IMG/VR virus record: IMGVR_UViG_3300027969_000039
Coordinates: 239,058-303,057 of that record
DNA length: 64,000 bases
Strand: one strand, 5' to 3'
This document shows positions 5,258-63,952 of the stretch, piece by piece. The stretch's first letter is position 1, and the number at the start of each line of letters is the position of its first letter. The position numbers and the translations under genes were made by a program. The notes beneath the pieces are model-generated. The model was given only the letters and a program-made list of their open reading frames with translations, was not told the origin of the DNA and did not search any database.

Positions 5258-14287
<9,030 letters not shown>

Positions 14288-50687: not shown

Positions 50688-50690
50688 AAT

Positions 50691-52016
50691 TTAAGTGCTC
50701 ATTTCTTTTAATAATTTATATGTAATTGGACTAACAATCTCTAATGATTGATCTCTCATTTGATCTAATTTATTAGTTATCTCAAAAAAATTAGTAAGTT
50801 CATGTGACAAATCTTCAGAGTTCATAAATTTTACTGCCCTATCTAGCTCCTTACAAAAAAACTTGTAATTAATTTCTTGTGTTTTTGTATTCATAATTCT
50901 TTCTTTATATGTTACCTTGCATTCTTCAAAATAGTTACTTATAAAAAGTTTACTAGTTAATGGAAAAATTTTAATATTATAACGTGCAGGTCCGTGTAAT
51001 AAATGTGAATCAAATTTTGTATCAGGGAAATTTTCAAATTTCCATAACATTAACTCTGGTAGCTGTAACAGGTTAAAAACCATAATGGTAGGAGATATAA
51101 CTGTTCTAAAATTTCCTTTTGCAGTAGTTAATTTAGACAAGTTATTTTCAATCTGTTTCCATTTACTTGGATATCGTATATAATCATTTAATTCTCCGAC
51201 TCCATCAATACTAGGAGCAATTTGAATCAGTTTAAAATGTTCCCATAGCCCCCATGCTTTTTTAGGTATGTTAGTGAGATTAGTCATTACTTCAATATAA
51301 ATTTGATTAGCATAACCCAATGAAATGCATTTTTCTAAAAAGCTATAATGATTGTCTATTAACAATGGCTCTCCGCCTATAATAAAAATATGCTTAAGAT
51401 TAGGTATATGCTTTTCTAAATTTTTCCAAAATAGTTCTTGTTCATGCCAATTATAAATATCTGTCTCTAGTTTTGCTTTTTCAGTTAAGTTTGTTATAAT
51501 TTTTAATTGATTACCCGATTGATCAGTAAAATAATTATTATTAAATAAAGTAACATGGTCATCATACCAAGCACTGGAATCAGTTGGGCCGCACATTCTA
51601 CATTTAAGATTGCATAGATTACCAAATCTTAAATCTGCATATTTAATGGGTACACTAGTTTCATCTATAGAACCATCTTCATTCGTTCTAGTTACTGCAT
51701 CATTTAATGAAAATTCTTTATTCCAATTCTCAATCATCTGTATTCTATTACTTCTATATCCAGTAGATTCTTCTTTCACGCACCTACTACACATTTTTGG
51801 AGACTCGTTAGCTAGTATAGTTTTTCTTACTTCTTTTAGAATTTTGGAATTTCTAAACGTTTCTAATCCATCTTTGGCTATATTAAAGTTTTCACCGTTG
51901 TCTTTTGTTATTGAACCTTTAGTAATAGAGGAATCTGCTTGACAACAAACTCGTAAATCACCGGTACTCCTAGTGCTTACTCCTATCCACGGCAACGGAC
52001 AATATGTATTAGACAT
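50691..52016 (-). CDS. Radical SAM protein with N-terminal twitch/SPASM domain
   Basis: CPLPW..LRVCC, CSRC, DLRFGNLCNLKCRMC, GGEPL. Confidence 0.9.
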   Translation of the reverse strand: MSNTYCPLPWIGVSTRSTGDLRVCCQADSSITKGSITKDNGENFNIAKDGLETFRNSKILKEVRKTILANESPKMCSRCVKEESTGYRSNRIQMIENWNKEFSLNDAVTRTNEDGSIDETSVPIKYADLRFGNLCNLKCRMCGPTDSSAWYDDHVTLFNNNYFTDQSGNQLKIITNLTEKAKLETDIYNWHEQELFWKNLEKHIPNLKHIFIIGGEPLLIDNHYSFLEKCISLGYANQIYIEVMTNLTNIPKKAWGLWEHFKLIQIAPSIDGVGELNDYIRYPSKWKQIENNLSKLTTAKGNFRTVISPTIMVFNLLQLPELMLWKFENFPDTKFDSHLLHGPARYNIKIFPLTSKLFISNYFEECKVTYKERIMNTKTQEINYKFFCKELDRAVKFMNSEDLSHELTNFFEITNKLDQMRDQSLEIVSPITYKLLKEMST

Positions 52017-52935
52017 AATTAGGAGACCATTTCTCAACTAAAGCATCTTGCTTACAATGACATTCATGTTTATATGTGCAAGTTATGGGTTCTGTTGGTA
52101 AAGTATATCCAGAATAAACATTGCCTATTTTTCCACCTACTCTTGGCCAGCATCTAGATATATCACCATTTGGATCAATTACAAAACGGTCTATTCCTGC
52201 ATTGCATTTCCAATCTGTAAAAATGTTTTTTTGATTCACTACTAAACTGTTCCAATTTGCTTGAACTCCGTTTAAAAAAATATTCTTTGGATATAAATCT
52301 AACCATGTTGGAAAACTAATAATAGAAGTTTTTTTAGGATATGATCGAATGTACTCTAATTGACTTTCAGTATATGGATATAACTCATCGCATATTAAAC
52401 TTTTTCTTACGGGTTTAATATCAATTAATATATCTAATTTTTCAAATTCCTTAATAGCAGTTAACCCTTTTTCCCAATAATCAGGCGTTATCAATAATGA
52501 AACCATTGGGAAACATTTATCTTTCATTATTTTAACAACCTGTACCAAATGCTCAGTGTCCACTTCTTTTGAGTGCCATGAAAACAAAAACATTGAATTG
52601 CTAGACTTAAACTGTTCCCAATATCTGAGAGTCCTAGATCCATTGGTGTTTATTTCAATCACAAGATTTTCATGTGAAACGCTATCCATAAATGCTTGTA
52701 ATTGCGGCCATTGTGTGGGTTCCCCACCTATTATCTCTAAACACACATGTGAGTTTTTTTGTCGTACTTTGTTAATAAAGTTAGCTACAGCTATATAATT
52801 TATATTCCATCTTTCAGAACCATCATTACTATTTGGGTGACAATAATCACATGTATAATTACACACATTATGTGGTTTAAACGATATCATTGCTATGTTT
52901 TTTGGACCAGAATTAGTTAAGTGAATAGGTATCAT
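52009..52935 (-). CDS. Radical SAM protein with C-terminal SPASM/twitch region
   Basis: CNYTCDYC, GGEPT, TNGSR, WKCNAG...RC...IGN...C....C.C..D. Confidence 0.9.
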   Translation of the reverse strand: MIPIHLTNSGPKNIAMISFKPHNVCNYTCDYCHPNSNDGSERWNINYIAVANFINKVRQKNSHVCLEIIGGEPTQWPQLQAFMDSVSHENLVIEINTNGSRTLRYWEQFKSSNSMFLFSWHSKEVDTEHLVQVVKIMKDKCFPMVSLLITPDYWEKGLTAIKEFEKLDILIDIKPVRKSLICDELYPYTESQLEYIRSYPKKTSIISFPTWLDLYPKNIFLNGVQANWNSLVVNQKNIFTDWKCNAGIDRFVIDPNGDISRCWPRVGGKIGNVYSGYTLPTEPITCTYKHECHCKQDALVEKWSPNYV

Positions 52936-54320
52936 TTAAATATATCTTTCATTTCTGGAAAAGTGTCATAAAAATTAGTACCGCGATATCTATCAACCTT
53001 CTCGAGGTAGTCTTTAGTTTCTGGTAATCTCACGCTCCAATCATCGCTTTTCATAAAGCTAATCATACCGCGCAGTCTATCAATACCATAAGACGCAACT
53101 TTCCAATCTTCTTTGGTTACTTTACCTTTGTGCCATGATGGAATACCTAACTCCCAATTTTCTTCCCACCACGGTATGAATTCTTCATACTTGCGTTCGC
53201 ACTCATCTTTGAACCATTTAGGCAATATCTTCACGTTCAAAAATGCAGGCCAATAGACAAAGTGATAGTTGATGCCACCCGCACCGAATGGCCACATATT
53301 TATTTTCTTGAAGTTCTGCTCTAACTTCCATTTTACAAAGTCTGGAATGTAATAAATGTTCAATGCGTTGACTGCACATGCAACAGTTATCTCTACATTG
53401 TCGCTAGTCTGTGTATCTAGTATATGAAATACTTCTTCTGTACGACTCCATTTGCTTGGATAACGTATGTAATCGTTCATCTCATGTATACTGTCTACAC
53501 TATAGTGAAAACGAACAATCTTGAAATGTTTCCATAATTCAAATAAATCTTCACGCCATTCTACTCCGTTACTGTTATAGCGTATCTCCATATCTTTAGC
53601 ATATCCTTGACGGATGCATTCTTCTAAGATATCATAGTGTTCTTCAATGATGAGACTCTCGCCACCTGCAAAATACAATTGCTTCATGTTTGGAATCTGT
53701 TCATAGAACTGTTTCCAAAATACTGGATTATTCTTGTGCCAATTATAGCTGCTTCCGTTTGTACTTCCTTTATTATCCCATTGCCATATCTCTTTTACAT
53801 TCTTATTTTCAATGGTAGGATAGATATTTTGCCATTCTTTAATCCAACCTGAACTGTCATGCGGGCTGCACATGATGCAAGCCAACTGACATTTAGTTCC
53901 AAATCTTAAATCAATATATGCTAATTGAGGTGGTACTTCGCCGTCACTTGTTGTCTCAGCTAATAACTTATCTAAGTCAACTCTTTCTTTCCAATACTTA
54001 GTTTCCCACATGCGTTTGCTGTTATGTCCTGCTCGTTCCTCTTCATAACACTTGCGACAGCTTGGTGGTTCTTCACCGTTCAACATCTGCTTACGCACGT
54101 TCCTCATGTAAGTACTATTCCAACTAGAGACAAAATCACTCACGTTCAGATTATTAGGACGACCTTCTTCATCTTTTAATATGCCTACATTACCACCACC
54201 AATTTTGTCATTAGTGATGCCTACACTACTAGCGTTGGCAGTACAGCATACACGCATCTGCCCATCTGGACGAGTGCTGAGATGTACCCAAGGTAAAATA
54301 CAGAATGTTTTAGAAGTCAT
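52932..54320 (-). CDS. Radical SAM protein with N-terminal twitch/SPASM domain
   Basis: CILPW..MRVCC, CRKC, DLRFGTKCQLACIMC, AGGE.L. Confidence 0.9.
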   Translation of the reverse strand: MTSKTFCILPWVHLSTRPDGQMRVCCTANASSVGITNDKIGGGNVGILKDEEGRPNNLNVSDFVSSWNSTYMRNVRKQMLNGEEPPSCRKCYEEERAGHNSKRMWETKYWKERVDLDKLLAETTSDGEVPPQLAYIDLRFGTKCQLACIMCSPHDSSGWIKEWQNIYPTIENKNVKEIWQWDNKGSTNGSSYNWHKNNPVFWKQFYEQIPNMKQLYFAGGESLIIEEHYDILEECIRQGYAKDMEIRYNSNGVEWREDLFELWKHFKIVRFHYSVDSIHEMNDYIRYPSKWSRTEEVFHILDTQTSDNVEITVACAVNALNIYYIPDFVKWKLEQNFKKINMWPFGAGGINYHFVYWPAFLNVKILPKWFKDECERKYEEFIPWWEENWELGIPSWHKGKVTKEDWKVASYGIDRLRGMISFMKSDDWSVRLPETKDYLEKVDRYRGTNFYDTFPEMKDIFK

Positions 54321-55503
54321 TTAATTTTATCAGTTCAGGGATAGTTTCCCAAGTGTTTTCATTTCTAAGTTTATCTATTTGTTTAGTTGTTTTGATGAAT
54401 AAATTTAAGTCTTTGAAATTAGAAGGTTTTGATAATTCTGCTAAAGTTTGTTTAAATTCTGAAATTATATTTGTTGAGTATTTATTGTCATATATATTTG
54501 CAAAAGATATAAGGTTATCGGTAATTGTTTTTTTAAATTCATCTGGAAGTACGCTTACGTTGTAATATGCAGGAGCTTCGATTAAATTAATATAAAAATT
54601 ATTCTTTTTAATTATCTTTGAATCAGTTAGATATGTAATAATATTAGGCAATCTACTAACATTTAATACTCCTACTGTTATTCCAATGCCAAATTTAATA
54701 AAATCAAAATTAGATAATTGTTTTAAATTAGATTCAACACTTTTCCATACTGTTCCGTAACGAACTAATTCAGCACGATCTCCAATCTCATCAATACTTG
54801 CCCATACACTTATCTTTTCAGAATTCCACTTGCGCCAATAATCTAGTATGTCTTTTTTTCCATATGTTAACGTAGAACAGTTTGTATTGTATCGTATACG
54901 TACATCAAATTTTTTATGTTCTACTAACATATCTAATATTTGCCAATGTTCAGGCATCAATAAAGGTTCTCCGCCTGCAAAATATATTTCTTCAACATTA
55001 TCAATTTGACTTTCTAAAAAATTAAAATCAATAGGAGTGTTTAATACTTTGTTTTGTTCAGATAACCATTTTAAATTAATTGCATCTTGTGTCCATGCGC
55101 TACTAAATGCAGGTCCGCAACTACGACATTTAAAATTACATAGATTGCTAAATCTAAAATCCCAATACTTCAAATGCATCGTAGAACAAGTTCCGTCAGA
55201 ATTTGTTATATTAGGTATATTTTTTAAAACATCTAAATAAGATTCATTGCGAGAATAACGATTACTTTTTCCGGTAACATCTTCTTTATCAAAACATGAA
55301 CTACATACAGTTGGACGAATGTTATTCATCATCTCACTTCGTAATTTCTTCATATTATCACTGTTCCATATTTCATTGATAGGTTGTGTATTAAGATCAC
55401 CGGCATGGTAATGCGGTTTAATCAAACAACACGGAACTACTTTACCATTTGGTTGAAAGTTTAAATGCACCCACGGAACAACACACAATGTTTTAGAAGT
55501 CAT
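54310..55503 (-). CDS. Radical SAM protein with N-terminal twitch/SPASM domain
   Basis: CVVPW..VPCC, CSSC, DFRFSNLCNFKCRSC, AGGEPL. Confidence 0.9.
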   Translation of the reverse strand: MTSKTLCVVPWVHLNFQPNGKVVPCCLIKPHYHAGDLNTQPINEIWNSDNMKKLRSEMMNNIRPTVCSSCFDKEDVTGKSNRYSRNESYLDVLKNIPNITNSDGTCSTMHLKYWDFRFSNLCNFKCRSCGPAFSSAWTQDAINLKWLSEQNKVLNTPIDFNFLESQIDNVEEIYFAGGEPLLMPEHWQILDMLVEHKKFDVRIRYNTNCSTLTYGKKDILDYWRKWNSEKISVWASIDEIGDRAELVRYGTVWKSVESNLKQLSNFDFIKFGIGITVGVLNVSRLPNIITYLTDSKIIKKNNFYINLIEAPAYYNVSVLPDEFKKTITDNLISFANIYDNKYSTNIISEFKQTLAELSKPSNFKDLNLFIKTTKQIDKLRNENTWETIPELIKLNDF

Positions 55504-55828
55504 TTTTTATTTCTTTAAATGAAATGTTTATACTATCATCTCTTACATCAGACTTATCTATGTTGTCATTTATTTTGTCACTACAAAATTTAGAACAAAC
55601 TGATTTTTCATTTTTCCAACTTTCTTCTATTTTTTTCATAGCTTGACTATTTTTCATTTCAGCTAAAGAATATTTTTTACCATCTAGCTGTTCATATAAA
55701 GGTCCTAAAAATTCTGTCACTTTATTAATATATGGTTCATTTGCTATCCAGCAACATGGAAAATAGAAGCCATGAGCAGAAATATAGTCTGATGTTAATC
55801 CTTTTTTACATCTAGGATAAATTAACAT
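55493..55828 (-). CDS. Stand-alone SPASM/twitch Fe-S domain
   Basis: PRC...ISAHG.YFPCCW...IEESW....VCSKFC; GAGG RBS. Confidence 0.7.
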   Translation of the reverse strand: MLIYPRCKKGLTSDYISAHGFYFPCCWIANEPYINKVTEFLGPLYEQLDGKKYSLAEMKNSQAMKKIEESWKNEKSVCSKFCSDKINDNIDKSDVRDDSINISFKEIKNDF

Positions 55829-56456
55829 AGCGCCTCTGTACTTCTTGCCAATCTATCGTTGGTGTTAATGGATCTTCACTTTCATATCTTACACTTTTTA
55901 CAATGCTAAATTCATGGAATCCTAATTTTCTTGCTAAGTATATACCTTCGTCAATATTGTATTGATTATACTTAAATAAAATCCATTTCCAAATTATTTT
56001 AATATTAGGATTATATTCTACTAAAGTCTTAATACCGTTTTCAATAGTTTCCCACTTGCTATTAACTCTATATAAATGATTGTTGTTTGGTAATCCATCT
56101 ATTGAAAATACAATGTTGTCACGATGGTCAAGTATGCTTGCTGTTTCTTTCCACCAATCGATACTTCTAAATGCACCATTAGTATGCATACCTATACTCA
56201 TGTGGGGATGTGCTGTTCGTATACTAGATATTAATTCGTGAAATTTAGGGTGATATATAGGATCACCGTGATTGCCACACATGACAAACTTCTTTTTTCC
56301 CTCAGCTAATTTTACGGTAGTGTCAATATCACAATCTTCTAATTTAATATTATCAATTGACAATGTTCGCGGGCAATGCGGACATGCTAACGTACACCTA
56401 CTAGTAGGTTCTATGTGTAGTACTCTGTCATCTATCCAAATATCTTCATTATTCAT
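55812..56456 (-). CDS. Radical SAM core domain (lacks auxiliary domain)
   Basis: HIEPTSRCTLACPHCPR, CGNHGDPI, HTNG, FSIDG, YR. Confidence 0.88.
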   Translation of the reverse strand: MNNEDIWIDDRVLHIEPTSRCTLACPHCPRTLSIDNIKLEDCDIDTTVKLAEGKKKFVMCGNHGDPIYHPKFHELISSIRTAHPHMSIGMHTNGAFRSIDWWKETASILDHRDNIVFSIDGLPNNNHLYRVNSKWETIENGIKTLVEYNPNIKIIWKWILFKYNQYNIDEGIYLARKLGFHEFSIVKSVRYESEDPLTPTIDWQEVQRRYVNLS

Positions 56457-56461
56457 GCTAT

Positions 56462-57730
56462 TTAAATAACAAATTCATCTAACCATGGAAATAAAGGTTT
56501 CCAATTTAAATTTCTTCTTCTATCTATATCATCTAGTTGAATTTTTAGTTCTTTTACTAATTCAGGGCAATAAGGTTGATTATTAATAGTATCACGATAT
56601 CCACTAAGTTTTTCTTTGAGATATTCAGATGGTGCAACTGCAATCATCCTGTCAAAATCTTCATCAAAAAACCCATTAGGAAATATATCGGCTCGCAAAT
56701 AAGTCATATAGTCAGCAAAACTAAAAGAAATTTCAATTAGCGAAAGATCATTTGTTGTTCTGATATTGTTATAATAATTAATTTTTTCAATTAATTCTGG
56801 ATATGTTTTTATAGTTAAGTTGCACATAGTAGAATGTACTACTAATTTTATTTTAGGGTATTCTGCTATTAACGTTTTAAAATTTTCTTCCCATTGAATT
56901 AAATCTAAACCATGTCTAACATATTCTTCTTGTGGTCCCCATGCATCAATGCTACAAAATATTCTAAAAGATTTTATATGATTTTTAGTAACTAAATTTT
57001 CTACTTTATCTAATATTTTTCTAAATTTAGTATTTGATACTTTTAAATTTGAAAAAATACTAAAAATTAATTCAGGGCATGGATTTGTTTCAAAAAATTC
57101 TATATTTTGTTCAAACTCAGGTTGAAAAAATGGCTCACCACCTAACAAATTATATTCTCTTATAGACAATGCATTTTTTTCCAACCAAGCCCAATATTTT
57201 TTTACTAATATGGGATAGTCTTTTTTTCTGTCAATATGTTTATCTAACTCTTTTTGTGATTTTAAATTAAATTTAATATCTTCATTTTCCCATACCGTGC
57301 TATATTCTGAATTGCAATAAAGGCAAGCCATGTTACATAAATTATTGAAATATACTTCAACAATAGTTGGCGATACTTTAATAGCTTTATTATTATTTAA
57401 CAATTCAACAGCAGGTTTTACATAGTGTTTGCTAGTAGGATGCACGTTTAAATTTACACTCATCCTATCACTAATGCCACCACTCTTTTCAATTTTTTCG
57501 CAATATTCACATCCTTTGCCGGGCCAACGGCCATCTAACATATCTTTCCTGGTACTTAATTTTAAAGGAGTATTGTGAAAATCTTCAATGTTTTCAACTG
57601 TTATTTCATCGGGGTTTACTCTATGACAACTGTTTGTTTTTTTAGCATATATATTTATTGAACTCCATGAAAATTTCCACACACAAGCCGGTTCCGGCAT
57701 TCCATATATATCTTTAAAATTATTTTTCAT
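56462..57730 (-). CDS. Radical SAM protein with N-terminal twitch domain
   Basis: C.WK..WS...SCHRV, CEYC, EVYFNNLCNMACLYC, GGEPF; ATGA overlap places the start at 57730. Confidence 0.9.
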   Translation of the reverse strand: MKNNFKDIYGMPEPACVWKFSWSSINIYAKKTNSCHRVNPDEITVENIEDFHNTPLKLSTRKDMLDGRWPGKGCEYCEKIEKSGGISDRMSVNLNVHPTSKHYVKPAVELLNNNKAIKVSPTIVEVYFNNLCNMACLYCNSEYSTVWENEDIKFNLKSQKELDKHIDRKKDYPILVKKYWAWLEKNALSIREYNLLGGEPFFQPEFEQNIEFFETNPCPELIFSIFSNLKVSNTKFRKILDKVENLVTKNHIKSFRIFCSIDAWGPQEEYVRHGLDLIQWEENFKTLIAEYPKIKLVVHSTMCNLTIKTYPELIEKINYYNNIRTTNDLSLIEISFSFADYMTYLRADIFPNGFFDEDFDRMIAVAPSEYLKEKLSGYRDTINNQPYCPELVKELKIQLDDIDRRRNLNWKPLFPWLDEFVI

Positions 57731-58395
57731 ATGAGTCTTCCAAATCCCCATTTTCTTTCATGGCACCACCAGCAAGTTTCACAATGTGGTGTTGACCAAT
57801 CATAAGTCTTAGCTTCGCAACTTTTAGTGATTGGAAATAATGTATCCATCAAGTTAAAATGATTATATAATTCTGCTATTCCTTTTTTATCTAAATTAGC
57901 AAAAGGTCTATAACATCTAGGTCCCGGCATAACTGATTTTATTTCTTCTGTGCGGTCTCTCCTAAAATCTCTCTCGTCTATCACAGCTTCATTAAATGAA
58001 TTGCACACTTCAGGTGGTGGATTGCAATTAATACCAGTGACATGGCAATCAATAATTTCATTTTTATACGCTCCTTCAGTCAGTATATCTTGTGCATCTT
58101 GTAATTCGGGTCCTTCCATTACAGGATCACAATGTAAATGTTCACTAAATTTGATATCAAATTCTTTCTCACAAAATTCTATTACTCTTTTACTAAAAAT
58201 AAATTGATAAGGTTTTAAAATATTGACCGCAGTTATAGGATGTATACTGATTTCTGGTCTTTCAGTTACTTTATACTTCGATAGTATATAGCAGATCATG
58301 GCGCTATCTGCGCCGCCTGAGATTTTAATTCCCACTTTATTGAATTGTGGATCTATAGTAAAATCTATATCCTGTTGAGAATTTTTGATAAACAT
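57727..58395 (-). CDS. QueC-like PP-loop protein (second copy)
   Basis: SGGADS, NPP, RPF.NLDK, TKSC...HC..CWWC.ER.WGF. Confidence 0.75.
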   Translation of the reverse strand: MFIKNSQQDIDFTIDPQFNKVGIKISGGADSAMICYILSKYKVTERPEISIHPITAVNILKPYQFIFSKRVIEFCEKEFDIKFSEHLHCDPVMEGPELQDAQDILTEGAYKNEIIDCHVTGINCNPPPEVCNSFNEAVIDERDFRRDRTEEIKSVMPGPRCYRPFANLDKKGIAELYNHFNLMDTLFPITKSCEAKTYDWSTPHCETCWWCHERKWGFGRLI

Positions 58396-58397
58396 GA

Positions 58398-59483
58398 TTA
58401 CTTAAATTGTTCTGTGAATACATCAAACTCTGTGCCGCATTTTTGTGAACACACTTCTAATTTCCCTGCTGCTACACTAGATAATTTCCAACTTGATTCT
58501 ATTTTTGAAAATAATTTACTATTGTCAATAACATCACTCAAATCGTTGTTGATAACATCGATGCCTTTTTTACCGCCTGTATTATCAATTATGTGCCAAA
58601 TTTGTTCTATTCTGTAATCTTCATGCCACCATTTATACATTCTACCTGCTGTCCAGCAGCAAGGCATAAGCAGTCCTTCGGCAGTGATAAAAATATTACC
58701 TTCTTTAACAACCTTACAATCTATTTTACAACTGTCATAGTATTTAGTCATGCTCCCGTGTTGAGCAATTAATTCTTGTTCTTTGGATAAAACACGATTT
58801 TGAAATTCTTCTTTAGGTTTTTTAAGCAATATAGTTTCCGTGCCTTTCCGATTTTGTGCTTGATGTTCTTCTTTTCCTTGATTTCTTGCAGTGCTAAAAA
58901 ATCTAGCAGTTTTCTTTTTAGTAAATTTTTCACATCCCCACTCATTTGCTAACTTTTCGGCTTCTTCCACTTGATGTTGATTGTGTTCAAATATGATATA
59001 ATCCCATCTTGCTCTGCCACCTGCATTGATAAAACTACGCATACTGTTTTCTACTATACTCCATTTAACATTTTGGCGATATAGATGATTAGTATCTACT
59101 AACCCATCCACAGAGAATATTACAGCACCTTTGTTGTTGTATATCTTGGCTAATTCTGTCCACCAATCAGTATCTCTAGCCCCTGCGTTAGTATTCATAC
59201 TGAGCCACATGTTTGCATTATGTTCTCTAAAATATCGAAATACTTCTAGTGTATCTCTAGCAACTATTGGATCACCTAAATTACCGCACATGTACATTGT
59301 GTCTAGCTGACTAATAAATTTTGTGGAGAATATCTTTTTGCAATCATCTAAAGATAGTTCAGCATTGGTGATGTGTTTATTATCTTTGCCACCGTTCTCG
59401 TTGCGGTCACACATTGGACATGCTGCTTGACATAACTGTGTTATCTCTAAATGAACTTTCTTTATATCTTTTGATTTATACAT
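58398..59483 (-). CDS. Radical SAM protein with C-terminal twitch domain
   Basis: HLEITQLCQAACPMC, CGNLGDP, FSVDG, C...FITAEG..PCCW...C...C. Confidence 0.9.
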   Translation of the reverse strand: MYKSKDIKKVHLEITQLCQAACPMCDRNENGGKDNKHITNAELSLDDCKKIFSTKFISQLDTMYMCGNLGDPIVARDTLEVFRYFREHNANMWLSMNTNAGARDTDWWTELAKIYNNKGAVIFSVDGLVDTNHLYRQNVKWSIVENSMRSFINAGGRARWDYIIFEHNQHQVEEAEKLANEWGCEKFTKKKTARFFSTARNQGKEEHQAQNRKGTETILLKKPKEEFQNRVLSKEQELIAQHGSMTKYYDSCKIDCKVVKEGNIFITAEGLLMPCCWTAGRMYKWWHEDYRIEQIWHIIDNTGGKKGIDVINNDLSDVIDNSKLFSKIESSWKLSSVAAGKLEVCSQKCGTEFDVFTEQFK

Positions 59484-60175
59484 TATTTTATGCCGATACG
59501 CATATATCGTGTGTACTTATCAAGCGCCAATTCACCTTCATATAGCATAGTAGACATTGGAGATTGTATTCTAAATTCTTCTAAGCTATTAGAACAATTT
59601 ATATGATCTTCAATCTCAACGTAGTTATTGGTTTGAAGTATAACTATCTTATTATTAGGTATGTTATTGTACCAAACATCAAAATTATGTATATGTTCAC
59701 AGCTAGTATTGATGATGGTGTTTGCAGAATCAGTTAATTCTAATTTACTTCTATCATATCTATGAGTTTCATATTTAAAATTTTCATAAATTAGATTATG
59801 TATATCTACTGTAGCTGCTTTAAATTGCCAATTATTTTTTACTTTTTCTCTGTTTATAGTTTCTGCTACTCGTTCACACAACGGATCAATGTCAAAGCTA
59901 CGAATTTTATCTATTATGCAACTACTCTCAAATAACATTGGTGCTAATGTAGCATACCAACCAGCACATAAAAATATGATACCTAAATCTAAGTTTAATT
60001 TTTCTAATTCAGATACTAACCATCGTTTACTTTTTAGTTGTCCCCAGCTTAACGCATCAGACAAGTCAGCACCCTCATTATCAACTGCATTGCATAATTG
60101 ACTAAACAATTTGTTTTGAGTTAAAACAAACATTCTTCCAAACGTATCTTTATCATCTGTCCAATTAATTGTCAT
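59483..60175 (-). CDS. SAM-dependent methyltransferase-like protein
   Basis: GQLKSK.WL, LCAGWYA, SFDIDP, INTSCEH, RYMRIG. Confidence 0.6.
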   Translation of the reverse strand: MTINWTDDKDTFGRMFVLTQNKLFSQLCNAVDNEGADLSDALSWGQLKSKRWLVSELEKLNLDLGIIFLCAGWYATLAPMLFESSCIIDKIRSFDIDPLCERVAETINREKVKNNWQFKAATVDIHNLIYENFKYETHRYDRSKLELTDSANTIINTSCEHIHNFDVWYNNIPNNKIVILQTNNYVEIEDHINCSNSLEEFRIQSPMSTMLYEGELALDKYTRYMRIGIK

Positions 60176-61751
60176 CAAATTTCTCCTTTAACCAATCAAA
60201 GTTATTAATCTTTGATAGTGCTAGTAAATGGCCTTTATTTAATGTTCCGTATGATCTGCCTTGAATTGCACCAGCAATCGCATATTTACCATATGGTCTA
60301 TCAGCACCCACTGTACACCATGTTTCCAATCTATTAAATGTTTCCTCATCGTTCTGTCTGTCAATGACTTTACTTGCTAGTTTGCAACATTCTCTAAATG
60401 CACTACGCCAAGCACTAAATGCGTCAGTATTGAAATTTGTTATGTTGCTAACTTCAAATACGGGCTTGTACTTAGTGCTGATACTGGTGGTCATGTCAGG
60501 CTTACTCAAGTCCATGTTGATTGTTAACTCTCTAGGGAATAACTTGATGCCACCAAATCCATACTCTAAGTCATTGACTGGATTCTTACTGCGCCAAACA
60601 TAAACCCAGTCCATCTTGTCTGGATGAACGATATAGTCAAAATTAAAATTCTTGTTTATTACGGCATCACCATCTACTATCCAAACCATCTTAGTGTTGG
60701 CTAACTTAGCAGCAGTAATATGTGCATTATGTATACCTTTAACACCGTCAACTCTTTTTGCTCTTGGGAATCTACGCTTAAGATTAGTCCAATTCTCCTC
60801 AGCATTAGGTTCATTGTATGTTACCATAATAATATCATATTCATACTCATTAATAGTATCAACTGAGTGTATCGTTTTGGGTTGTCTATCGGGGTTGAAT
60901 TCTAAAGTTTTAATGAATTTGCTTTGTTCACTAGTAAATGGTTCACATATTGGGATAATGCTACCTAAAGTTTTGCATTCGTTTACTGCATCTAACACTG
61001 ACATTTTTTCTACCGTAGATTTATACAAATCATTTAAATAATCAAAATCTCTTACTTGAGTAAAATCCCAATTTGTATATTGTGTTTTATAACATCCTTG
61101 TCTAGCACCTAATATAGCCCATATGCCATTATTAACCTCTATTCCAGTAGTCATCCAAATTTTTAGTCTATTTAAATTACCTATGTTTAAGTCTGCTAAT
61201 TCATCGACTTTAATTCCGTTATGCAAGCACATCTTTACCCCTTCACGGAATCCAGCACGCCATGCTTGCAACTGGCTAGTATTATTGTGTATTATAGAAT
61301 ATGACTTATCTATTGCCATATAATTTAATGCCCAACAAAAATCTACTTGAGTCATGGGATCATTTAGATCCGCTGCCTCATGTGTTTTCATATCAAGCAT
61401 TGCTTGTACAGGCCAACATTTGATTCCCCCGTTGCCGTACAATAAACCGTTGATGATATTCTTACTGGGCCAACTAAAGACTGTTTTACTGTCATCGATT
61501 GAATCATCTAACACTAGTGTCTGATGTAGATATTTGTGGTCAATAACCGCATCGCCGTCAATGACTGATACTCGTGGGGTAGTTGCTAATTTTGCAACCG
61601 CTTTGTGTGCAGCGTCACTACCTTTAACTCCATGAACCCTTTTGGCATAAGGAATTTTTGTTAACAAATCTTCCCAATTTGCTTGTGCATTTGGCTCATC
61701 ATAGCTAAGATAGACAACATCGTATTCGTAGATTTTAAATTCTTTACTCAT
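60165..61751 (-). CDS. Protein with two tandem GT-A glycosyltransferase-like domains
   Basis: Two copies of YD....Y.EPNA..NW..L...P.AKRV.GVKG...AH...A.......DGD ... N..N.L.YG.GGIK ... AWR..FRE..K. Confidence 0.65.
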   Translation of the reverse strand: MSKEFKIYEYDVVYLSYDEPNAQANWEDLLTKIPYAKRVHGVKGSDAAHKAVAKLATTPRVSVIDGDAVIDHKYLHQTLVLDDSIDDSKTVFSWPSKNIINGLLYGNGGIKCWPVQAMLDMKTHEAADLNDPMTQVDFCWALNYMAIDKSYSIIHNNTSQLQAWRAGFREGVKMCLHNGIKVDELADLNIGNLNRLKIWMTTGIEVNNGIWAILGARQGCYKTQYTNWDFTQVRDFDYLNDLYKSTVEKMSVLDAVNECKTLGSIIPICEPFTSEQSKFIKTLEFNPDRQPKTIHSVDTINEYEYDIIMVTYNEPNAEENWTNLKRRFPRAKRVDGVKGIHNAHITAAKLANTKMVWIVDGDAVINKNFNFDYIVHPDKMDWVYVWRSKNPVNDLEYGFGGIKLFPRELTINMDLSKPDMTTSISTKYKPVFEVSNITNFNTDAFSAWRSAFRECCKLASKVIDRQNDEETFNRLETWCTVGADRPYGKYAIAGAIQGRSYGTLNKGHLLALSKINNFDWLKEKFDDN

Positions 61752-61810: not shown

Positions 61811-61839
61811 TTGACTTCTATTCAGAACTACTATATAAT
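61811..61839 (+). promoter_or_regulatory. Sigma70-type promoter
   Basis: TTGACT(61811-16)-17 nt-TATAAT(61834-39). Confidence 0.75.
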
Positions 61840-61906
61840 ACACACATAAACGCAAAAAACACTATGTAATTTGCAGTTATTTTTAACCAGGACTAAATAG
61901 AATACT

Positions 61907-62041
61907 ATGATGAATAAAACTTGTTACATGCCGAAACATACGGGGCTATGGTCTATAGAGACCTTAGCGGCCTTTGCGGTATCATATCCTACAAGTATTC
62001 GCGGGAATGATAACCAAAGAGGAGCCCGGGGAGAGGAATAA
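61907..62041 (+). CDS. 44-aa putative leader peptide (not in ORF track)
   Basis: MMNKTCYMPKHTGLWSIETLAAFAVSYPTSIRGNDNQRGARGEE*; lies between promoter elements and a terminator; TAAATA 7 nt upstream of the ATG. Confidence 0.55.
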   Translation: MMNKTCYMPKHTGLWSIETLAAFAVSYPTSIRGNDNQRGARGEE

Positions 62042-62068
62042 CTAGTTACATCATAACAAAATTTATTC

Positions 62069-62103
62069 AACCCCTGGGAAACTAAAAAGTCTCAGGGGTT
62101 TTT
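62069..62103 (+). terminator. Intrinsic terminator / attenuator hairpin
   Basis: AACCCCTGGGA-10 nt loop-TCTCAGGGGTT (11 bp, one G-U) running into a T tract. Confidence 0.8.
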
Positions 62104-62128
62104 CGTTGTATAAAAACAACAAACAGAG

Positions 62129-62157
62129 TTTACAGTAAATGGATACTCTGATATACT
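62129..62157 (+). promoter_or_regulatory. Sigma70-type promoter with extended -10, upstream of the tRNA array
   Basis: TTTACA(62129-34)-17 nt-TATACT(62152-57), preceded by TG. Confidence 0.65.
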
Positions 62158-62411: not shown

Positions 62412-62487
62412 TGGGGTGTCGCCTAGTGGCCTAAGGCAACGGTCTTTGAAATCGTCATCATGGGTTCGAATCCCATCTCCCCTGCCA
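62412..62487 (+). tRNA. tRNA-Gln(TTG)
   Basis: Cloverleaf; ACGGT-CT TTG AA-ATCGT; TTCGAAT; CCA. Confidence 0.9.
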
Positions 62488-62494
62488 AATTTAT

Positions 62495-62573
62495 TCCGTA
62501 GAATCCGAGCATGGTGCACGGACTTGACTGTTAATCAATGACTAGCTGGGATCATTACCCAGATACGGAGCCA
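62495..62573 (+). tRNA. tRNA-Asn(GTT)
   Basis: TTGA-CT GTT AA-TCAA; variant T-loop ATCATTA; GCCA end. Confidence 0.8.
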
Positions 62574-62579
62574 ATTTTA

Positions 62580-62653
62580 GCCCTTTTCGTATAACGGTAT
62601 TACGCCTGTTTTGTAATCAGGATACGGCAGTTCAATTCTGTCATGGGGCACCA
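62580..62653 (+). tRNA. tRNA-Thr(TGT)
   Basis: CCTGT-TT TGT AA-TCAGG; TTCAATT; ACCA. Confidence 0.8.
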
Positions 62654-62658
62654 GTTTT

Positions 62659-62717
62659 AGGATAGCAACAGCAAATCAAAAAAACTTTCAACGTTTATGA
62701 AAAAAAATGCTATCCTG
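62659..62717 (+). ncRNA. Mini RNA: AGGATAG...CTATCCTG stem enclosing an anticodon-arm-sized hairpin
   Basis: 9-bp AGGATAGCA/TGCTATCCT stem, CAGCAA motif, TTTCA-ACGTTTA-TGAAA. Confidence 0.55.
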
Positions 62718-62726
62718 TTTTATTAT

Positions 62727-62800
62727 GCGTGGTTAGTTTAACGGAAAAATCAGTGGTTGCCAACTACTAGTCAAGGGTTCGACTCCCTTACCCCGCACCA
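62727..62800 (+). tRNA. tRNA-Gly(GCC)
   Basis: AGTGG-TT GCC AA-CTACT; TTCGACT; ACCA. Confidence 0.88.
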
Positions 62801-62807
62801 ATTTTAT

Positions 62808-62882
62808 GCCTGGTTAGTTCAGCGGAAGAACGTCTGCCCGATTAGCGGAATGTCGTAGGTTCGACTCCTACACTAGGTACCA
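62808..62882 (+). tRNA. tRNA-Ile(GAT) with non-canonical loop (C33, U37)
   Basis: TCTGC-CC GAT TA-GCGGA; otherwise a complete cloverleaf with CCA. Confidence 0.75.
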
Positions 62883-62887
62883 GTTTA

Positions 62888-62999
62888 AGGATAGGTTCAG
62901 CAAATAATTTAACTACTACTCTGTAAAAGTAAAGGAACGGTTCGACTCCGTAGCCGCAAGGTTTGGTGTAACGGTAGCACTATGTTAAAAACTATCCTG
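62888..62999 (+). ncRNA. Circularly permuted tRNA-mimic RNA (YrlA/Y-RNA-like) with Tyr(GTA) anticodon arm
   Basis: Inside an AGGATAG/CTATCCT stem the order is anticodon arm, T arm, GCAA-capped acceptor, D arm. Confidence 0.7.
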
Positions 63000-63008
63000 T
63001 TATTTTAT

Positions 63009-63083
63009 ATTCCGTGAGGCAGCTGGCGTGGCCGATAGTCCTTCAAACTATTGAGATGGGATCAAAACCCATACGGAATACCA
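63009..63083 (+). tRNA. tRNA with loop CCTTCAA: Glu(TTC) with C33, or TCA opal-suppressor register
   Basis: ATTCCGT/ACGGAAT acceptor; ATAGT/ACTAT anticodon stem; T-loop ATCAAAA; ACCA. Confidence 0.65.
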
Positions 63084-63089
63084 ATCAAT

Positions 63090-63166
63090 GCGACCGTAAC
63101 TCAGCTGGATAGAGTACTAGGCTACGAACTTAGGAGTCGGGAGTTCGAATCTCTCCGGTCGCACCA
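63090..63166 (+). tRNA. tRNA-Arg(ACG)
   Basis: CTAGG-CT ACG AA-CTTAG; canonical. Confidence 0.93.
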
Positions 63167-63170
63167 ATTT

Positions 63171-63244
63171 GCTCTTTTAGTATAAAGGTATTATAATACA
63201 TTGGTAATGTATAGACGCTGGATCGTTACCAGCAAGGAGCACCA
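63171..63244 (+). tRNA. tRNA-Thr(GGT)
   Basis: ATACA-TT GGT AA-TGTAT; T-loop ATCGTTA; ACCA. Confidence 0.85.
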
Positions 63245-63338
63245 TATAAGAACACACTGCTTGCCTGACTGCAAAAGTCGTGGTAAACTACAAGAGAAAG
63301 GGGTTCAAATCCCCGGGACTGGTAGTGTGTTTCTATAT
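63245..63338 (+). ncRNA. Long-stem RNA carrying a T-arm-like hairpin
   Basis: TATAAGAACACACTGC/GTAGTGTGTTTCTATA stem enclosing GACT-GCAAA-AGTC, GTGGTAAAC and GGGG-TTCAAAT-CCCC. Confidence 0.5.
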
Positions 63339-63414
63339 GGTAATATAGCATAGTGGCTAATGCAACTGCTTCATACGCAGTCTATCGTTGGTTCGAGTCC
63401 AACTATTACCACCA
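63339..63414 (+). tRNA. tRNA-Met or Ile2 (CAT)
   Basis: ACTGC-TT CAT AC-GCAGT; ACCA; G1-C72 pair, so not an initiator. Confidence 0.88.
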
Positions 63415-63423
63415 AACAATTTT

Positions 63424-63499
63424 GCCTCTATAACTCAGTTGGTAGAGTATCGTGTTGATAACGCGGAAGTCCTTGGTTCAAGTCCAAGTGGAGGCACCA
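63424..63499 (+). tRNA. tRNA-Ile(GAT), canonical loop
   Basis: TCGTG-TT GAT AA-CGCGG; ACCA. Confidence 0.9.
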
Positions 63500-63505
63500 A
63501 AATTT

Positions 63506-63579
63506 GGGCTGCTAGTATAATGGGATTACACTGGCCTTGCAAGTCAGTTATTGGGGTTCGATTCCCCAGCGGTCCACCA
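63506..63579 (+). tRNA. tRNA-Ala(TGC)
   Basis: CTGGC-CT TGC AA-GTCAG; G3-U70; ACCA. Confidence 0.92.
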
Positions 63580-63588
63580 AGTTTTTAT

Positions 63589-63697
63589 GGGTTGTCAAGG
63601 TTGGTCTCATGCACGGTGAATAGCCGTAGGAGCATTATCGAGTGTGCGCCACCGCACTCTTGGTCTGACAAGGGTTCAAGTCCCTTACAATCCACCA
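63589..63697 (+). ncRNA. 109-nt tmRNA-like / D-armless alanine-identity RNA
   Basis: GGGTTGT/ACAATCC-A-CCA with G3-U70; GAC-AAGGG-TTCAAGT-CCCTT; interior of non-tRNA hairpins. Confidence 0.6.
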
Positions 63698-63705
63698 AGT
63701 TTTAT

Positions 63706-63784
63706 CTGTGTGTGAGAAAGTCCGGTCTAATCTACTCGCCTTGGAAGTGAGAAATCGTAGGTTCAAATCCTACCGCACAGACCA
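63706..63784 (+). tRNA. tRNA-Pro(TGG)
   Basis: CTCGC-CT TGG AA-GTGAG; C1-G72, A73. Confidence 0.9.
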
Positions 63785-63793
63785 ATTATTTAC

Positions 63794-63870
63794 GGTGACC
63801 ATAGTGTAAAGGTTTAGCACCTCGCTCTGTGAAAGCGATAGAATGGGATCGTTCCCCATTGGTTACCCCA
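63794..63870 (+). tRNA. tRNA-His(GTG) with encoded G-1
   Basis: TCGCT-CT GTG AA-AGCGA; G-1:C73; CCA. Confidence 0.9.
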
Positions 63871-63875
63871 ATCAT

Positions 63876-63952
63876 GCCCTGGTAGCGCAATTGGTAGAGG
63901 CAATGGTCTAAGAAGCCATCAAGTGCGAGTTCGAATCTCGCCTAGGGCACCA
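63876..63952 (+). tRNA. tRNA-Leu(AAG), short variable loop
   Basis: ATGGT-CT AAG AA-GCCAT; 5-nt variable region; ACCA. Confidence 0.82.

What the first reader, a model, noticed from the sequence alone, without database searches (positions are those of the whole stretch)
63589..63697. 109-nt mini-tmRNA-like RNA with alanine identity but no D arm, anticodon or tag frame
Seen: 7-bp acceptor GGGTTGT/ACAATCC with G3-U70, A73 and CCA, and a perfect T arm preceded by GAC. The 3' end (GAC-N5-TTCAAGT-N5...TCCACCA) has tmRNA form. The interior holds ATGC[ACGGT-GAATA-GCCGT]GCAT and GAGTGTG-CGCCAC-CGCACTC hairpins. Established: G3-U70 specifies AlaRS charging; one-piece tmRNAs are roughly three times longer and carry a tag reading frame. 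Inference: an alanylated tRNA-like domain that might rescue ribosomes without tagging, or titrate SmpB/EF-Tu.
Basis: partly seen in the sequence, partly recalled or inferred. Interest (0 to 1): 0.75.

Follow-up and report, generated by a model that had tools for sequence, protein, structure and literature searches.

The report
Anticodon-less alanine-type tRNA-like phage RNA
A 109-base RNA gene in the tRNA array of an uncultured freshwater jumbo phage has a tRNA's alanine-accepting end but no anticodon; it is better conserved than the phage's tRNAs or tmRNA, so it is functional, and it looks like a tmRNA head without being a recognisable member of that family.

Summary
Window 63589-63697 (+) carries a 7-bp acceptor stem with G3·U70, A73, an encoded CCA and a canonical T arm. 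It has no D stem, no 7-nt anticodon loop, and two interior hairpins. It is a real gene. There are 14 sequence variants in 18 different tRNA-array contexts of lake-water phage contigs, always 109 nt, with sharp conservation edges at G1 and A109. Variants are 91-99% identical, while same-anticodon tRNAs are mostly 55-77% identical and the phages' own two-piece tmRNAs 75-77%. All stem changes but two keep pairing; two pairs are compensated. No copy was found in 185,579 prokaryote species genomes or in GenBank phages.

The "mini-tmRNA" reading is only partly supported. TLD-only mini-tmRNAs are a known kind (mycobacteriophage DS6A), and I found 93 canonical ones in IMG/VR. A covariance model built from them scores DS6A at 57.6 bits but this element at 24 bits, the same as ordinary tRNAs. 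It also lacks the UUCGAC hallmark and helix 2.

Best reading: a new family of tRNA-like RNA, processed like a tRNA and probably alanylated, that cannot decode. It probably acts on tRNA/tmRNA-handling machinery. The function is inferred, not shown.

The parts
63589..63595 (+). Acceptor stem, 5' strand GGGUUGU (positions 1-7); G3 forms the G3·U70 wobble
   Evidence: 7/7 pairs, invariant in 14 variants.
63596..63608 (+). 13-nt unpaired 'D-analogue' CAAGGUUGGUCUC (positions 8-20). It has no D stem. G11G12 and G15G16 are invariant; positions 13, 14, 19 and 20 vary. It contains the first copy of the direct repeat UUGGUCU (13-19).
   Evidence: tmRNA D-analogues are also 13-14 nt with GG at the same offset but end in UUCGAC.
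63609..63635 (+). Hairpin 1 (positions 21-47): 4 bp, then 5 bp, an AGGA bulge on the 3' side and loop GAAUA. The loop holds UGA and UAG in two frames.
   Evidence: The 27/37 pair shows a compensated G-C to A-U change in L009.
63636..63636 (+). Single-nucleotide linker U48 (A in one variant)
63637..63664 (+). Hairpin 2 (positions 49-76): 11 bp with a U·U mismatch and loop CCAC. The alternative register is the 7-bp stem 52-58/65-71 with loop CGCCAC. It overlaps the second UUGGUCU repeat (72-78).
   Evidence: One-sided changes at 53 and 71 keep pairing in both registers. The changes at 57 and 66 break a pair in this register, and only 57 does in the alternative.
63665..63669 (+). 5-nt linker CUGAC (positions 77-81) before the T arm. 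U78 changes to A together with U19 in three variants. G79-C81 could pair with G16-C18.
63670..63686 (+). T arm AAGGG-UUCAAGU-CCCUU (positions 82-98)
   Evidence: The 83/97 pair shows a compensated A-U to U-A change in two variants; 85/95 changes G-C to G·U in one variant.
63687..63697 (+). Acceptor stem 3' strand ACAAUCC (99-105), discriminator A (106 = A73) and encoded CCA (107-109)
   Evidence: Conservation stops exactly after A109.
63506..63579 (+). Upstream neighbour tRNA-Ala(UGC), 9 nt away; part of the same + strand tRNA array (62412-63952 and beyond the window end)
63706..63784 (+). Downstream neighbour tRNA-Pro(UGG), 8 nt away
61811..62157 (+). Two sigma-70-like promoter matches upstream of the array: 61811-61839 (11/12) and 62129-62157 (10/12 with TG). 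No + strand terminator match lies inside the array.
   Evidence: consensus matches only.

Best explanation
This is the gene of a previously undescribed family of tRNA-like small RNAs carried in the large tRNA arrays of freshwater jumbo phages.

Shown:
- It is a discrete 109-nt unit that is shuffled among arrays like a tRNA gene.
- It folds as acceptor stem / unpaired 13-nt D-analogue / hairpin 1 / hairpin 2 / 5-nt linker / T arm / A-CCA.
- It is under much stronger purifying selection than the surrounding tRNAs and the phage's own tmRNA.

Inferred:
- It is co-transcribed with the array and trimmed at G1 and A109 by the host tRNA-processing enzymes.
- It is charged with alanine by host AlaRS through G3·U70 and A73.
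- Having no anticodon, it cannot decode. It acts as a non-decoding alanyl-tRNA mimic on machinery that handles the upper half of tRNAs or tmRNA (SmpB, EF-Tu, the stalled ribosome).
- It thereby modulates ribosome rescue, either by tag-less rescue or by competition, alongside the phage's tagging two-piece tmRNA.
- The two invariant hairpins supply a function that canonical TLD-only mini-tmRNAs lack.
For: - Anatomy.
- Family size: 14 variants in 18 contexts, all 109 nt, with edges of conservation at G1 and A109.
- Conservation: 91-99% identity against 55-77% for most same-anticodon tRNAs and 75-77% for the two-piece tmRNA.
- Pairing: 99.6-99.8% of cells are paired, with compensated changes at 27/37 and 83/97.
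- Alanine identity: in these arrays G3·U70 occurs in 12 of 13 tRNA-Ala and in only about 2 genuine cases among 192 other tRNAs. Its presence with A73 and CCA is therefore specific.
- TLD-like traits: an unpaired 13-nt D-analogue with GG at the tmRNA offset, GAC before the T arm, and 3' similarity to a crAss-like phage tmRNA. tmRNA is the best-scoring model of the tRNA clan.
- Precedent: the DS6A TLD-only RNA, and the cited inhibition of tmRNA by such a molecule (PMC4131195; PMC11915505). Canonical TLD-only RNAs are common in phages.
- Transcription: contigs from metatranscriptome libraries contain the element.
Against: - It does not score as a TLD: RF00023 gives 8.1 bits, and my TLD-only model gives 24.1 bits, the same as ordinary tRNAs, while DS6A scores 57.6.
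- The 5' UUCGAC motif and helix 2 are missing. A P2a-like pairing of 12-16 with 77-81 is contradicted by uncompensated changes at 13, 14 and 78.
- Hairpin 1 emerges where SmpB would sit on a TLD, so SmpB binding may be hindered.
- No SmpB, AlaRS, RF/ArfB, Pth or CCA-adding enzyme gene is found in this contig. SmpB is also absent from five related contigs.
- The same phages keep a full tagging tmRNA, so plain titration of SmpB would hurt their own tmRNA.
- RNA evidence is only assembled contigs from RNA libraries that may contain DNA.
- High identity could owe something to recent exchange between arrays, since some tRNAs are also 100% identical.
Confidence: 0.4

Rival explanations
1. It is a stable regulatory or effector RNA whose functional part is the two invariant hairpins and the single-stranded segments. 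The acceptor/T minihelix is only a tRNA-like handle for RNase P / 3' processing and for stability, as in T4 species 1 RNA or mascRNA. It is not aminoacylated in any meaningful way.
For: - The loops, the AGGA bulge and the linkers are as invariant as the stems, which suggests sequence-specific partners.
- The direct repeat UUGGUCU occurs at 13-19 and 72-78. The same U-to-A change is found at both copies in three variants, as expected for two copies of one binding site.
- T4 keeps two non-tRNA stable RNAs in its tRNA cluster, one of them with a T-arm-like 3' domain.
- The element scores no better than tRNAs on TLD models.
Against: - A pure handle needs pairing, not a G·U at exactly 3:70 with A73 and an encoded CCA. 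That combination is almost confined to tRNA-Ala in these arrays.
- My model R1 finds no relative in the T4 tRNA region.
- No candidate target or partner was identified. Short complementarities in the genome are at chance level.
Confidence: 0.3
2. It is a decoy or sponge for host factors that attack or modify the upper half of tRNAs. Candidates are acceptor-stem or 3'-end directed toxins, tRNA-directed defence nucleases or transferases, and RNase R-type nucleases. It would protect the phage's and host's real tRNAs during infection.
For: - It sits among up to 41 phage tRNA genes in arrays, of a kind described in the literature as a putative anti-defence system (abstract of PMC12803027).
- These arrays hold several other non-canonical tRNA-like genes.
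- Structured t(m)RNA fragments have been reported to act in anti-defence (PMC11662646).
Against: - Most known tRNA-directed defence nucleases cut anticodon loops (established knowledge), and this RNA lacks one.
- Nothing in the sequence points to a particular toxin.
- A decoy would not obviously need two invariant extra hairpins.
Confidence: 0.15
3. It is a true, highly reduced tmRNA with an ultra-short reading frame. After alanine transfer, translation resumes at GCA (23-25) and stops at UGA (29-31) in the hairpin-1 loop, which would act like tmRNA helix 5. Ribosomes would be released properly without a degradation tag.
For: - Stop codons in two frames lie in the hairpin-1 loop.
- GCA is the usual resume codon, as in this phage's own tmRNA.
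- Tags of 2 amino acids are reported in some bacteria (PMC11915505).
- 13 of 14 variants keep GCA-NNN-UGA.
Against: - One variant (L023) loses the UGA and has no later in-frame stop.
- The resume codon would lie only 15 nt after the acceptor stem and inside a stable stem.
- There is no helix 2 or pseudoknot.
- It fails both tmRNA models.
- The frame was found post hoc.
Confidence: 0.08
4. It is a decaying pseudo-tRNA, or a tRNA gene disrupted by a small insertion, with the UUGGUCU repeats as a target-site duplication and no function of its own.
For: - A 7-nt direct repeat flanks the 52-nt interior.
- The arrays contain rearranged tRNA fragments.
Against: - Removing the repeat-flanked segment leaves a 50-nt minihelix, not a tRNA (read directly).
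- ARAGORN with introns finds nothing sensible.
- The element is the best-conserved gene of the arrays, with a fixed length of 109 nt in 18 contexts.
- The two repeat copies co-vary.
Confidence: 0.03

Closest known systems
TLD-only ('CDS-less') mini-tmRNA: mycobacteriophage DS6A (JN698994 28478-28560), with similar forms in jakobid mitochondria and some plastids (PMC4131195, PMC11915505). 93 canonical viral examples were found here (L064 onward).
   Same: - Phage-encoded and short.
- 7-bp acceptor stem with G3·U70, discriminator A, T arm, and an unpaired D-analogue of 13-14 nt with GG.
- No anticodon and no real tag.
- 27 of the 93 lie within 300 nt of a tRNA gene.
   Different: - Canonical forms are 66-90 nt. 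They carry GGNUUCGAC at the 5' side and GGAC before the T arm. A single helix 2 closes the interior.
- This element is 109 nt. It has GGUCUC and UGAC instead, no closing helix, and two local hairpins.
- Model R2 scores DS6A at 57.6 bits and this element at 24.1 bits. R1 does not find DS6A.
Full-length tmRNA, including this phage's own two-piece beta-type tmRNA (G000:C1 about 162912-163282, minus strand; RF01850 155.6 bits)
   Same: - Alanine identity set, T arm and a D-loop without a stem.
- 3' end of the form GAC-T arm-NNNNUCC-A-CCA.
   Different: - No helix 2, no pseudoknots and no tag ORF with an LAA-type degron.
- RF00023 scores 8.1 bits against a threshold of 47.
- It evolves far more slowly than the tmRNA of the same phages.
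tRNA-Ala
   Same: - G3·U70, A73, CCA and the T arm.
- It sits in the array with tRNA-like spacing, next to tRNA-Ala(UGC).
- The 5-nt linker NNGNC before the T arm resembles a tRNA variable loop.
   Different: - No D stem and no 7-nt anticodon loop.
- About 33 nt longer.
- Not detected by ARAGORN or RF00005.
- 13 nt rather than 2 nt lie between the acceptor stem and the first helix.
Phage T4 species 1 and 2 stable RNAs (rnaC, rnaD)
   Same: - Non-tRNA small stable RNAs encoded inside a phage tRNA cluster.
- rnaC has a T-arm-like hairpin near its 3' end.
- Their function is unknown.
   Different: - No detectable similarity (R1 gave no hit in L046).
- rnaC lacks a clean 7-bp acceptor stem with G3·U70 and an encoded CCA.
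tRNA-like processing handles (mascRNA; the YrlA tRNA-like module)
   Same: - An acceptor/T-arm mimic without decoding function.
- The mascRNA model matches the T arm only (13.4 bits).
   Different: - Those RNAs lack alanine identity elements or a free CCA end (from my own knowledge).
- No Ro/TROVE gene is present in the phage contig.
- No Rfam match.

Membership tests
tmRNA / tRNA-like domain (TLD) | 7-bp acceptor stem with G3·U70, discriminator A and 3' CCA | tested here: met
   all 7 pairs, G3·U70, A73 and CCA are invariant in 14 variants.
tmRNA / tRNA-like domain (TLD) | tRNA-like T stem-loop | tested here: met
   5-bp stem and loop UUCAAGU; the 83/97 pair is compensated.
tmRNA / tRNA-like domain (TLD) | Reduced D-loop without a stem (PMC3968760) | tested here: met
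   positions 8-20 are unpaired, 13 nt, with GG at 11-12 as in the tmRNAs.
tmRNA / tRNA-like domain (TLD) | Conserved 5' ...GGNUUCGAC and 3' GGAC flanking helix 2 | tested here: not met
   the element has GGUCUC at the 5' side; at the 3' side only GAC is kept (UGAC).
tmRNA / tRNA-like domain (TLD) | Helix 2: the 5' segment after the D-loop pairs with the 3' segment before the T arm and closes the rest of the molecule | tested here: not met
   the interior forms two local hairpins. Pairing of 12-16 with 77-81 is contradicted by uncompensated changes. Only a 3-bp 16-18/79-81 pairing is possible, and it never varies, so it is uninformative.
tmRNA / tRNA-like domain (TLD) | Tag reading frame with a resume codon and an in-frame stop | tested here: inconclusive
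   only GCA-CGG-UGA (lost in 1 of 14 variants) and AUG-CAC-GGU-GAA-UAG. There is no degron-like tag.
tmRNA / tRNA-like domain (TLD) | Scores as a member with family covariance models | tested here: not met
   RF00023 gives 8.1 bits against a threshold of 47, with DS6A at 43.2. The TLD-only model R2 gives 24.1 bits against DS6A at 57.6, while tRNAs of the same arrays reach up to about 32-33 bits.
tmRNA / tRNA-like domain (TLD) | Alanylation by AlaRS; binding of SmpB and EF-Tu; entry into stalled ribosomes | not testable with these tools
No wet-lab data exist.
Canonical tRNA (RF00005) | Cloverleaf with a D arm and a 7-nt anticodon loop, with or without an intron | tested here: not met
T4-type stable RNAs of tRNA clusters (rnaC/rnaD) | Sequence or structure similarity to T4 species 1 or 2 RNA | tested here: not met
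   R1 found nothing in the T4 tRNA region L046 at E <= 10; the folds differ. Only the genomic setting is shared.
Y RNA-like (YrlA) tRNA mimic | Ro/Rsr partner gene and a Ro-binding terminal stem instead of a free CCA end | tested here: not met
   No TROVE domain in the contig. The element ends in a free A-CCA. No Rfam match.

The most novel reading that the evidence does not exclude
The RNA is a self-contained, all-RNA alanyl-tRNA mimic. Hairpin 1 (9 bp, about the length of the stacked D and anticodon stems) would replace the anticodon arm that SmpB supplies to tmRNA. Hairpin 2 would play the part of the long variable arm / helix 2. It would either enter empty A sites and end translation without a protein adaptor and without a degron, possibly using the two stop codons in the hairpin-1 loop. 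Or it would donate alanine to a non-ribosomal acceptor. Either way it would be a phage-invented third kind of alanine acceptor besides tRNA-Ala and tmRNA.
Probability: 0.12. Interest if true: 0.85.

Novelty: new variant of a known kind. Interest (0 to 1): 0.6.

Why it matters
- Phage tRNA arrays are usually read as codon-supply or anti-defence cargo. Here the most conserved gene of such arrays is not a decoder at all. It is an anticodon-less RNA with alanine identity, kept alongside a complete phage tmRNA.
- If it is charged and engages SmpB, EF-Tu or the ribosome, it shows that phages tune ribosome rescue with more than one RNA. It would also give a compact natural probe of what the minimal alanine-accepting ribosome ligand needs.
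- If it is not charged, it is a new structured phage RNA that borrows the tRNA processing route.
- The by-product finding has practical value. Canonical TLD-only mini-tmRNAs are common in viral contigs and ARAGORN misses nearly all of them. This matters for phage annotation and for the question of how often phages interfere with trans-translation.

Tried and rejected
- **Intron-containing or refolded tRNA.** ARAGORN with introns and lowered thresholds gives only a mis-registered 'tRNA-Asp' with a broken acceptor stem. Rejected.
- **tmRNA-style P2a pairing of 12-16 with 77-81.** It is energetically possible, but positions 13, 14 and 78 change without compensation. Rejected.
- **Insertion with target-site duplication.** Removing the segment does not restore a tRNA. 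Rejected.
- **Small ORFs behind the AGGAG bulge** (GUG at 54-56, 8 codons to UGA 78-80). The stop is lost in three variants. Rejected.
- **Derivation from the phage's own tmRNA, or a second copy.** blastn-short against the 303-kb contig shows a single copy and only chance-level matches. The best is a T-arm similarity to the neighbouring tRNA-Gly.
- **GenBank phages.** There is no homologue. The only hit is a weak 37-nt match to a crAss-like phage tmRNA 3' end.
- **185,579 prokaryote species genomes.** Only the 3' parts of normal tmRNAs match the loose pattern.
- **Partner genes in the phage contig** (SmpB, TROVE, CCA-adding enzyme, AlaRS, RF-1/ArfB, Pth). None found. SmpB is also absent from five related contigs.
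- **Neighbouring genes.** They are radical-SAM/SPASM, QueC-like and glycosyltransferase-like genes on the other strand, with no evident link.
- **Complex prediction with E. coli SmpB plus the RNA.** The job was not folded and gave no verdict. It is no evidence either way.
- **Mis-specified pattern.** One IMG/VR scan was wasted on it.
- **Read laying.** It could use only assembled contigs of RNA libraries. The element is present in a lake metatranscriptome contig with flanks, but transcription and processing are not shown.
- **Mao et al. 2009** (the DS6A experiment) is not in the paper library. I cite it only as quoted by PMC4131195.

Full report
**Where it lies.** The window is the last 64 kb of a 303,057-bp IMG/VR virus contig (G000:C1:239058-303057, CheckV completeness 86%). 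Its end holds a + strand tRNA array that runs off the contig. ARAGORN tRNAs and Rfam 12. Three more tRNAs appear at a lower ARAGORN threshold. The finding lies between tRNA-Ala(UGC), 9 nt upstream, and tRNA-Pro(UGG), 8 nt downstream. Two sigma-70-like promoter matches precede the array, and no + strand terminator match lies inside it. Co-transcription with the tRNAs is therefore the simplest reading; this is an inference.

**The observation.** Element position n corresponds to window 63588+n.
- GGGUUGU (1-7) pairs with ACAAUCC (99-105), including G3·U70.
- A106 is the discriminator and CCA is encoded.
- The T arm is AAGGG-UUCAAGU-CCCUU (82-98), preceded by GAC.

No detector calls it a tRNA or a tmRNA. 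With introns allowed and thresholds lowered, ARAGORN produces only a mis-registered model. In a permissive Rfam search the best model of the tRNA clan is tmRNA RF00023. It aligns end to end but uses only the two termini, at 8.1 bits against a gathering score of 47.

I leave the register open. RNAalifold, unconstrained, returns the same four-helix fold.

**It is a conserved gene.** Exact and degenerate pattern scans found the element in 9 further IMG/VR contigs and in 21 of 32 metagenome hits. The other 11 metagenome hits are 3' parts of ordinary tmRNAs or chance matches.
- There are 14 distinct sequences, all exactly 109 nt, with a mean column identity of 97%.
- They sit in 18 different sequence contexts. 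Column identity is 0.975 inside the element, about 0.7 in the 10-nt spacers, and 0.46-0.55 beyond. The drop falls exactly at G1 and A109.
- In arrays whose same-anticodon tRNAs are mostly 55-77% identical to those of the window, the element is 91-99% identical.
- The two-piece tmRNAs of the same phages are 75-77% identical, where the element is 99% (G004) and 93% (G003).
- Some tRNAs are also 100% identical between otherwise different arrays. Exchange of array cassettes therefore happens and may contribute to the identity. Even so, the element is the one cassette present and near-identical everywhere.
- All substitutions in stems keep pairing except at 57 and 66 in hairpin 2 (only 57 in the alternative register). 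Two pairs are compensated: 27/37 G-C to A-U, and 83/97 A-U to U-A.
- Variation concentrates at 13, 14, 19, 20, the two loops, 48 and 78.
- The model R1 built from the family finds one copy per locus at 130-137 bits. The next hits are ordinary tRNAs below 29 bits.
- The element is single-copy in the contig. It is absent from GenBank phages and from one genome each of 185,579 prokaryote species.

**Alanine identity.** Among 205 distinct tRNAs predicted in these arrays, 12 of 13 tRNA-Ala have G3·U70. Among 192 others there are only about two genuine cases. G3·U70 as the main AlaRS determinant, sufficient even in minihelices, is established knowledge. Its presence here with A73 and an encoded CCA is unlikely to be incidental. 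I put alanylation at about 0.7, but it is not shown.

**Is it a mini-tmRNA?** The kind exists. The tmRNA database papers list mycobacteriophage DS6A as 'TLD only'. They state that a similar molecule, chargeable or not, strongly inhibits tmRNA, perhaps by titrating SmpB (PMC4131195; PMC11915505). CDS-less forms are reported in jakobid mitochondria and some plastids.

I located the DS6A element (JN698994 28478-28560; RF00023 43.2 bits). A pattern encoding the canonical hallmarks within a short span then hit 93 IMG/VR loci. They give 82 distinct matched sequences of 66-90 nt, some of them overlapping registers of the same RNA, and all with G3·U70. At least 62 have 6 or more of 7 acceptor pairs. 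27 lie within 300 nt of a tRNA. ARAGORN calls a tmRNA on only 5.

A model R2 built from 23 of them scores DS6A, which was not in the training set, at 57.6 bits (E = 8e-12). It scores the present element at 24.1 bits (20.5-27.3 in relatives). That is the range of ordinary tRNAs in the same arrays: tRNA-Ala 24.4, tRNA-Arg 23.9, the best about 32-33.

Compared with 11 tmRNAs and DS6A, the element shares the following:
- the length of the unpaired D-analogue (13 nt);
- the GG at positions 11-12;
- GAC before the T arm.

It has GGUCUC where all the others have (U)UCGAC or a near variant, and it has no helix 2. Architecturally it resembles a TLD. By every membership test I could run, it is not a recognisable tmRNA derivative. 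It may equally descend from a tRNA-Ala; its T arm is most like that of the neighbouring tRNA-Gly.

**Context bearing on function.**
- The contig encodes a bona fide two-piece, betaproteobacterial-type tmRNA with tag ANDELYSLAA (ARAGORN; RF01850 155.6 bits). This hints at a betaproteobacterial host (inference).
- Four related contigs also carry a two-piece tmRNA. In G003 and G004 the acceptor piece has an unusual T loop, GGCAGUG.
- No SmpB, TROVE, CCA-adding enzyme, AlaRS, RF-1/ArfB or Pth gene was found in the contig. No SmpB was found in five relatives either. All of these contigs are incomplete.
- The phages thus keep a tagging tmRNA and this RNA side by side. That argues against redundancy and against simple sabotage of trans-translation.
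- Topologically, hairpin 2 lies where helix 2, or a long variable arm, leaves the T-arm side. Hairpin 1 (9 bp) lies where the D and anticodon stems, or SmpB on a TLD, would be (PMC3968760). The RNA could therefore either clash with SmpB or dispense with it.
- The hairpin-1 loop contains UGA and UAG in two frames, closing GCA-CGG-UGA and AUG-CAC-GGU-GAA-UAG. One variant loses the UGA. I treat an ultra-short tag as a low-probability option.
- A 7-nt direct repeat UUGGUCU (13-19 and 72-78) changes its last base U to A at both copies in three variants. This may be a single evolutionary event. It could reflect a U·U/A·A contact next to a possible G16-C18/G79-C81 pairing, or two copies of one protein site. 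It is unexplained.

**Expression.** Several lake and freshwater RNA libraries hold the sequence. In one metatranscriptome, a 214-nt assembled contig covers 63584-63703 with one change (A32G, a known variant). On both sides it runs on into sequence unlike the window, and the downstream sequence matches that of relative L007. In another library labelled RNA but probably DNA, a 96-nt contig covers 63584-63679 at high depth. These are contigs, DNA carry-over cannot be excluded, and no ends could be mapped. This is consistent with transcription but is not evidence of processing.

**Verdict.** The element is a real, strongly constrained, phage-specific tRNA-like RNA gene of a family not in Rfam. The 'mini-tmRNA' reading is partly supported. 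It has the alanine-acceptor half and the D-stem-less design of a TLD, and phage TLD-only RNAs are a known kind that I show to be common. But it fails the family's sequence and structure tests and carries two extra invariant hairpins.

My best explanation is a processed, alanylated, non-decoding tRNA mimic acting on tRNA/tmRNA-handling machinery (confidence 0.4). The main rivals are:
- a stable RNA that uses the minihelix only as a processing handle (0.3);
- a decoy for tRNA-directed host factors (0.15).

Novelty: a new variant of a known kind. Interest: 0.6.

Noticed in passing
L064-L15x (IMG/VR loci); alignments A3, A4; model R2: Canonical TLD-only mini-tmRNAs are widespread in viral contigs. 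They are 66-90 nt with GGGG...GGNUUCGAC, one capped helix 2, then GGAC, a T arm and CCACCA. There are 93 loci and 82 distinct matched sequences (some of them overlapping registers of the same RNA), all with G3·U70. 27 lie beside tRNA genes. ARAGORN calls only 5 of them. The literature I found names only phage DS6A and organelles.
   Followed up: partly
Outside the window: G000:C1 about 162912-163282 (-) = L012 1413-1783: The phage encodes a complete permuted (two-piece) betaproteobacterial-type tmRNA: RF01850 155.6 bits, tag ANDELYSLAA. This hints at the host lineage.
   Followed up: partly
L052 (G004) and L053 (G003), acceptor piece of the two-piece tmRNA: In two related phages the tmRNA acceptor piece has a non-canonical T loop, GGCAGUG, in place of UUCGACU. 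The tag frame is kept (ANDELYSIAA; ANDSQFALAA read by eye).
   Followed up: no
L010 7912-7989; L026 717-794; L036 2558-2635: A 78-nt tRNA-like gene with acceptor stem GGGCGAU/AUCGUCC (G3·U70, A73, CCA), a normal D arm and T arm, but apparently only a 5-nt 'anticodon' loop. ARAGORN calls it tRNA-Val(aac). In L010 it lies directly upstream of the 109-nt element. It is a second possible non-decoding alanine acceptor.
   Followed up: no
window 63245-63338: A 94-nt spacer between tRNA-Thr and tRNA-Met holds a T-arm-like hairpin GGGGUUCAAAUCCCC inside a long terminal stem (AGAACACACU / AGUGUGUUUCU). It has no CCA and no Rfam match at E <= 1. It may be another structured RNA.
   Followed up: partly
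window 62659-62720 and 62883-63007: Two spacers are bounded by AGGATAG...CTATCCTGTT inverted repeats. The second contains a T arm plus 3' acceptor-like piece followed by a D-arm-like piece, which looks like a rearranged or permuted tRNA fragment.
   Followed up: no
window 62495-62573, 62580-62653, 63009-63083: Three tRNAs, Asn(GUU), Thr(UGU) and Glu(UUC), are missed by ARAGORN at default settings. The Asn and Glu genes have unusual T loops or position 33.
   Followed up: partly
window about 47182-59483 (-): A block of 31-33% GC DNA encodes at least eight radical-SAM-domain proteins (Pfam or PHROG hits, several below Pfam's own cut-off), one of them with a SPASM domain. It also holds a weak QueC-like match. 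A weak glycosyltransferase-like match lies just beyond it at 60165-61751. This may be a modification or peptide-maturation cluster.
   Followed up: partly
window 5258-14287 (+) and 16595-24418 (+): Two giant ORFs of 3009 and 2607 aa. A class I ribonucleotide reductase large subunit lies at 28461-30776.
   Followed up: no
L016 12972-13056 and other related arrays: ARAGORN labels several array members tRNA-SeC, tRNA-Pyl or tRNA-Stop, that is, with stop-codon-reading anticodons. L020 6681-6768 is an 88-nt tRNA-like gene with no callable anticodon arm. These arrays are rich in non-canonical tRNA-like genes.
   Followed up: no
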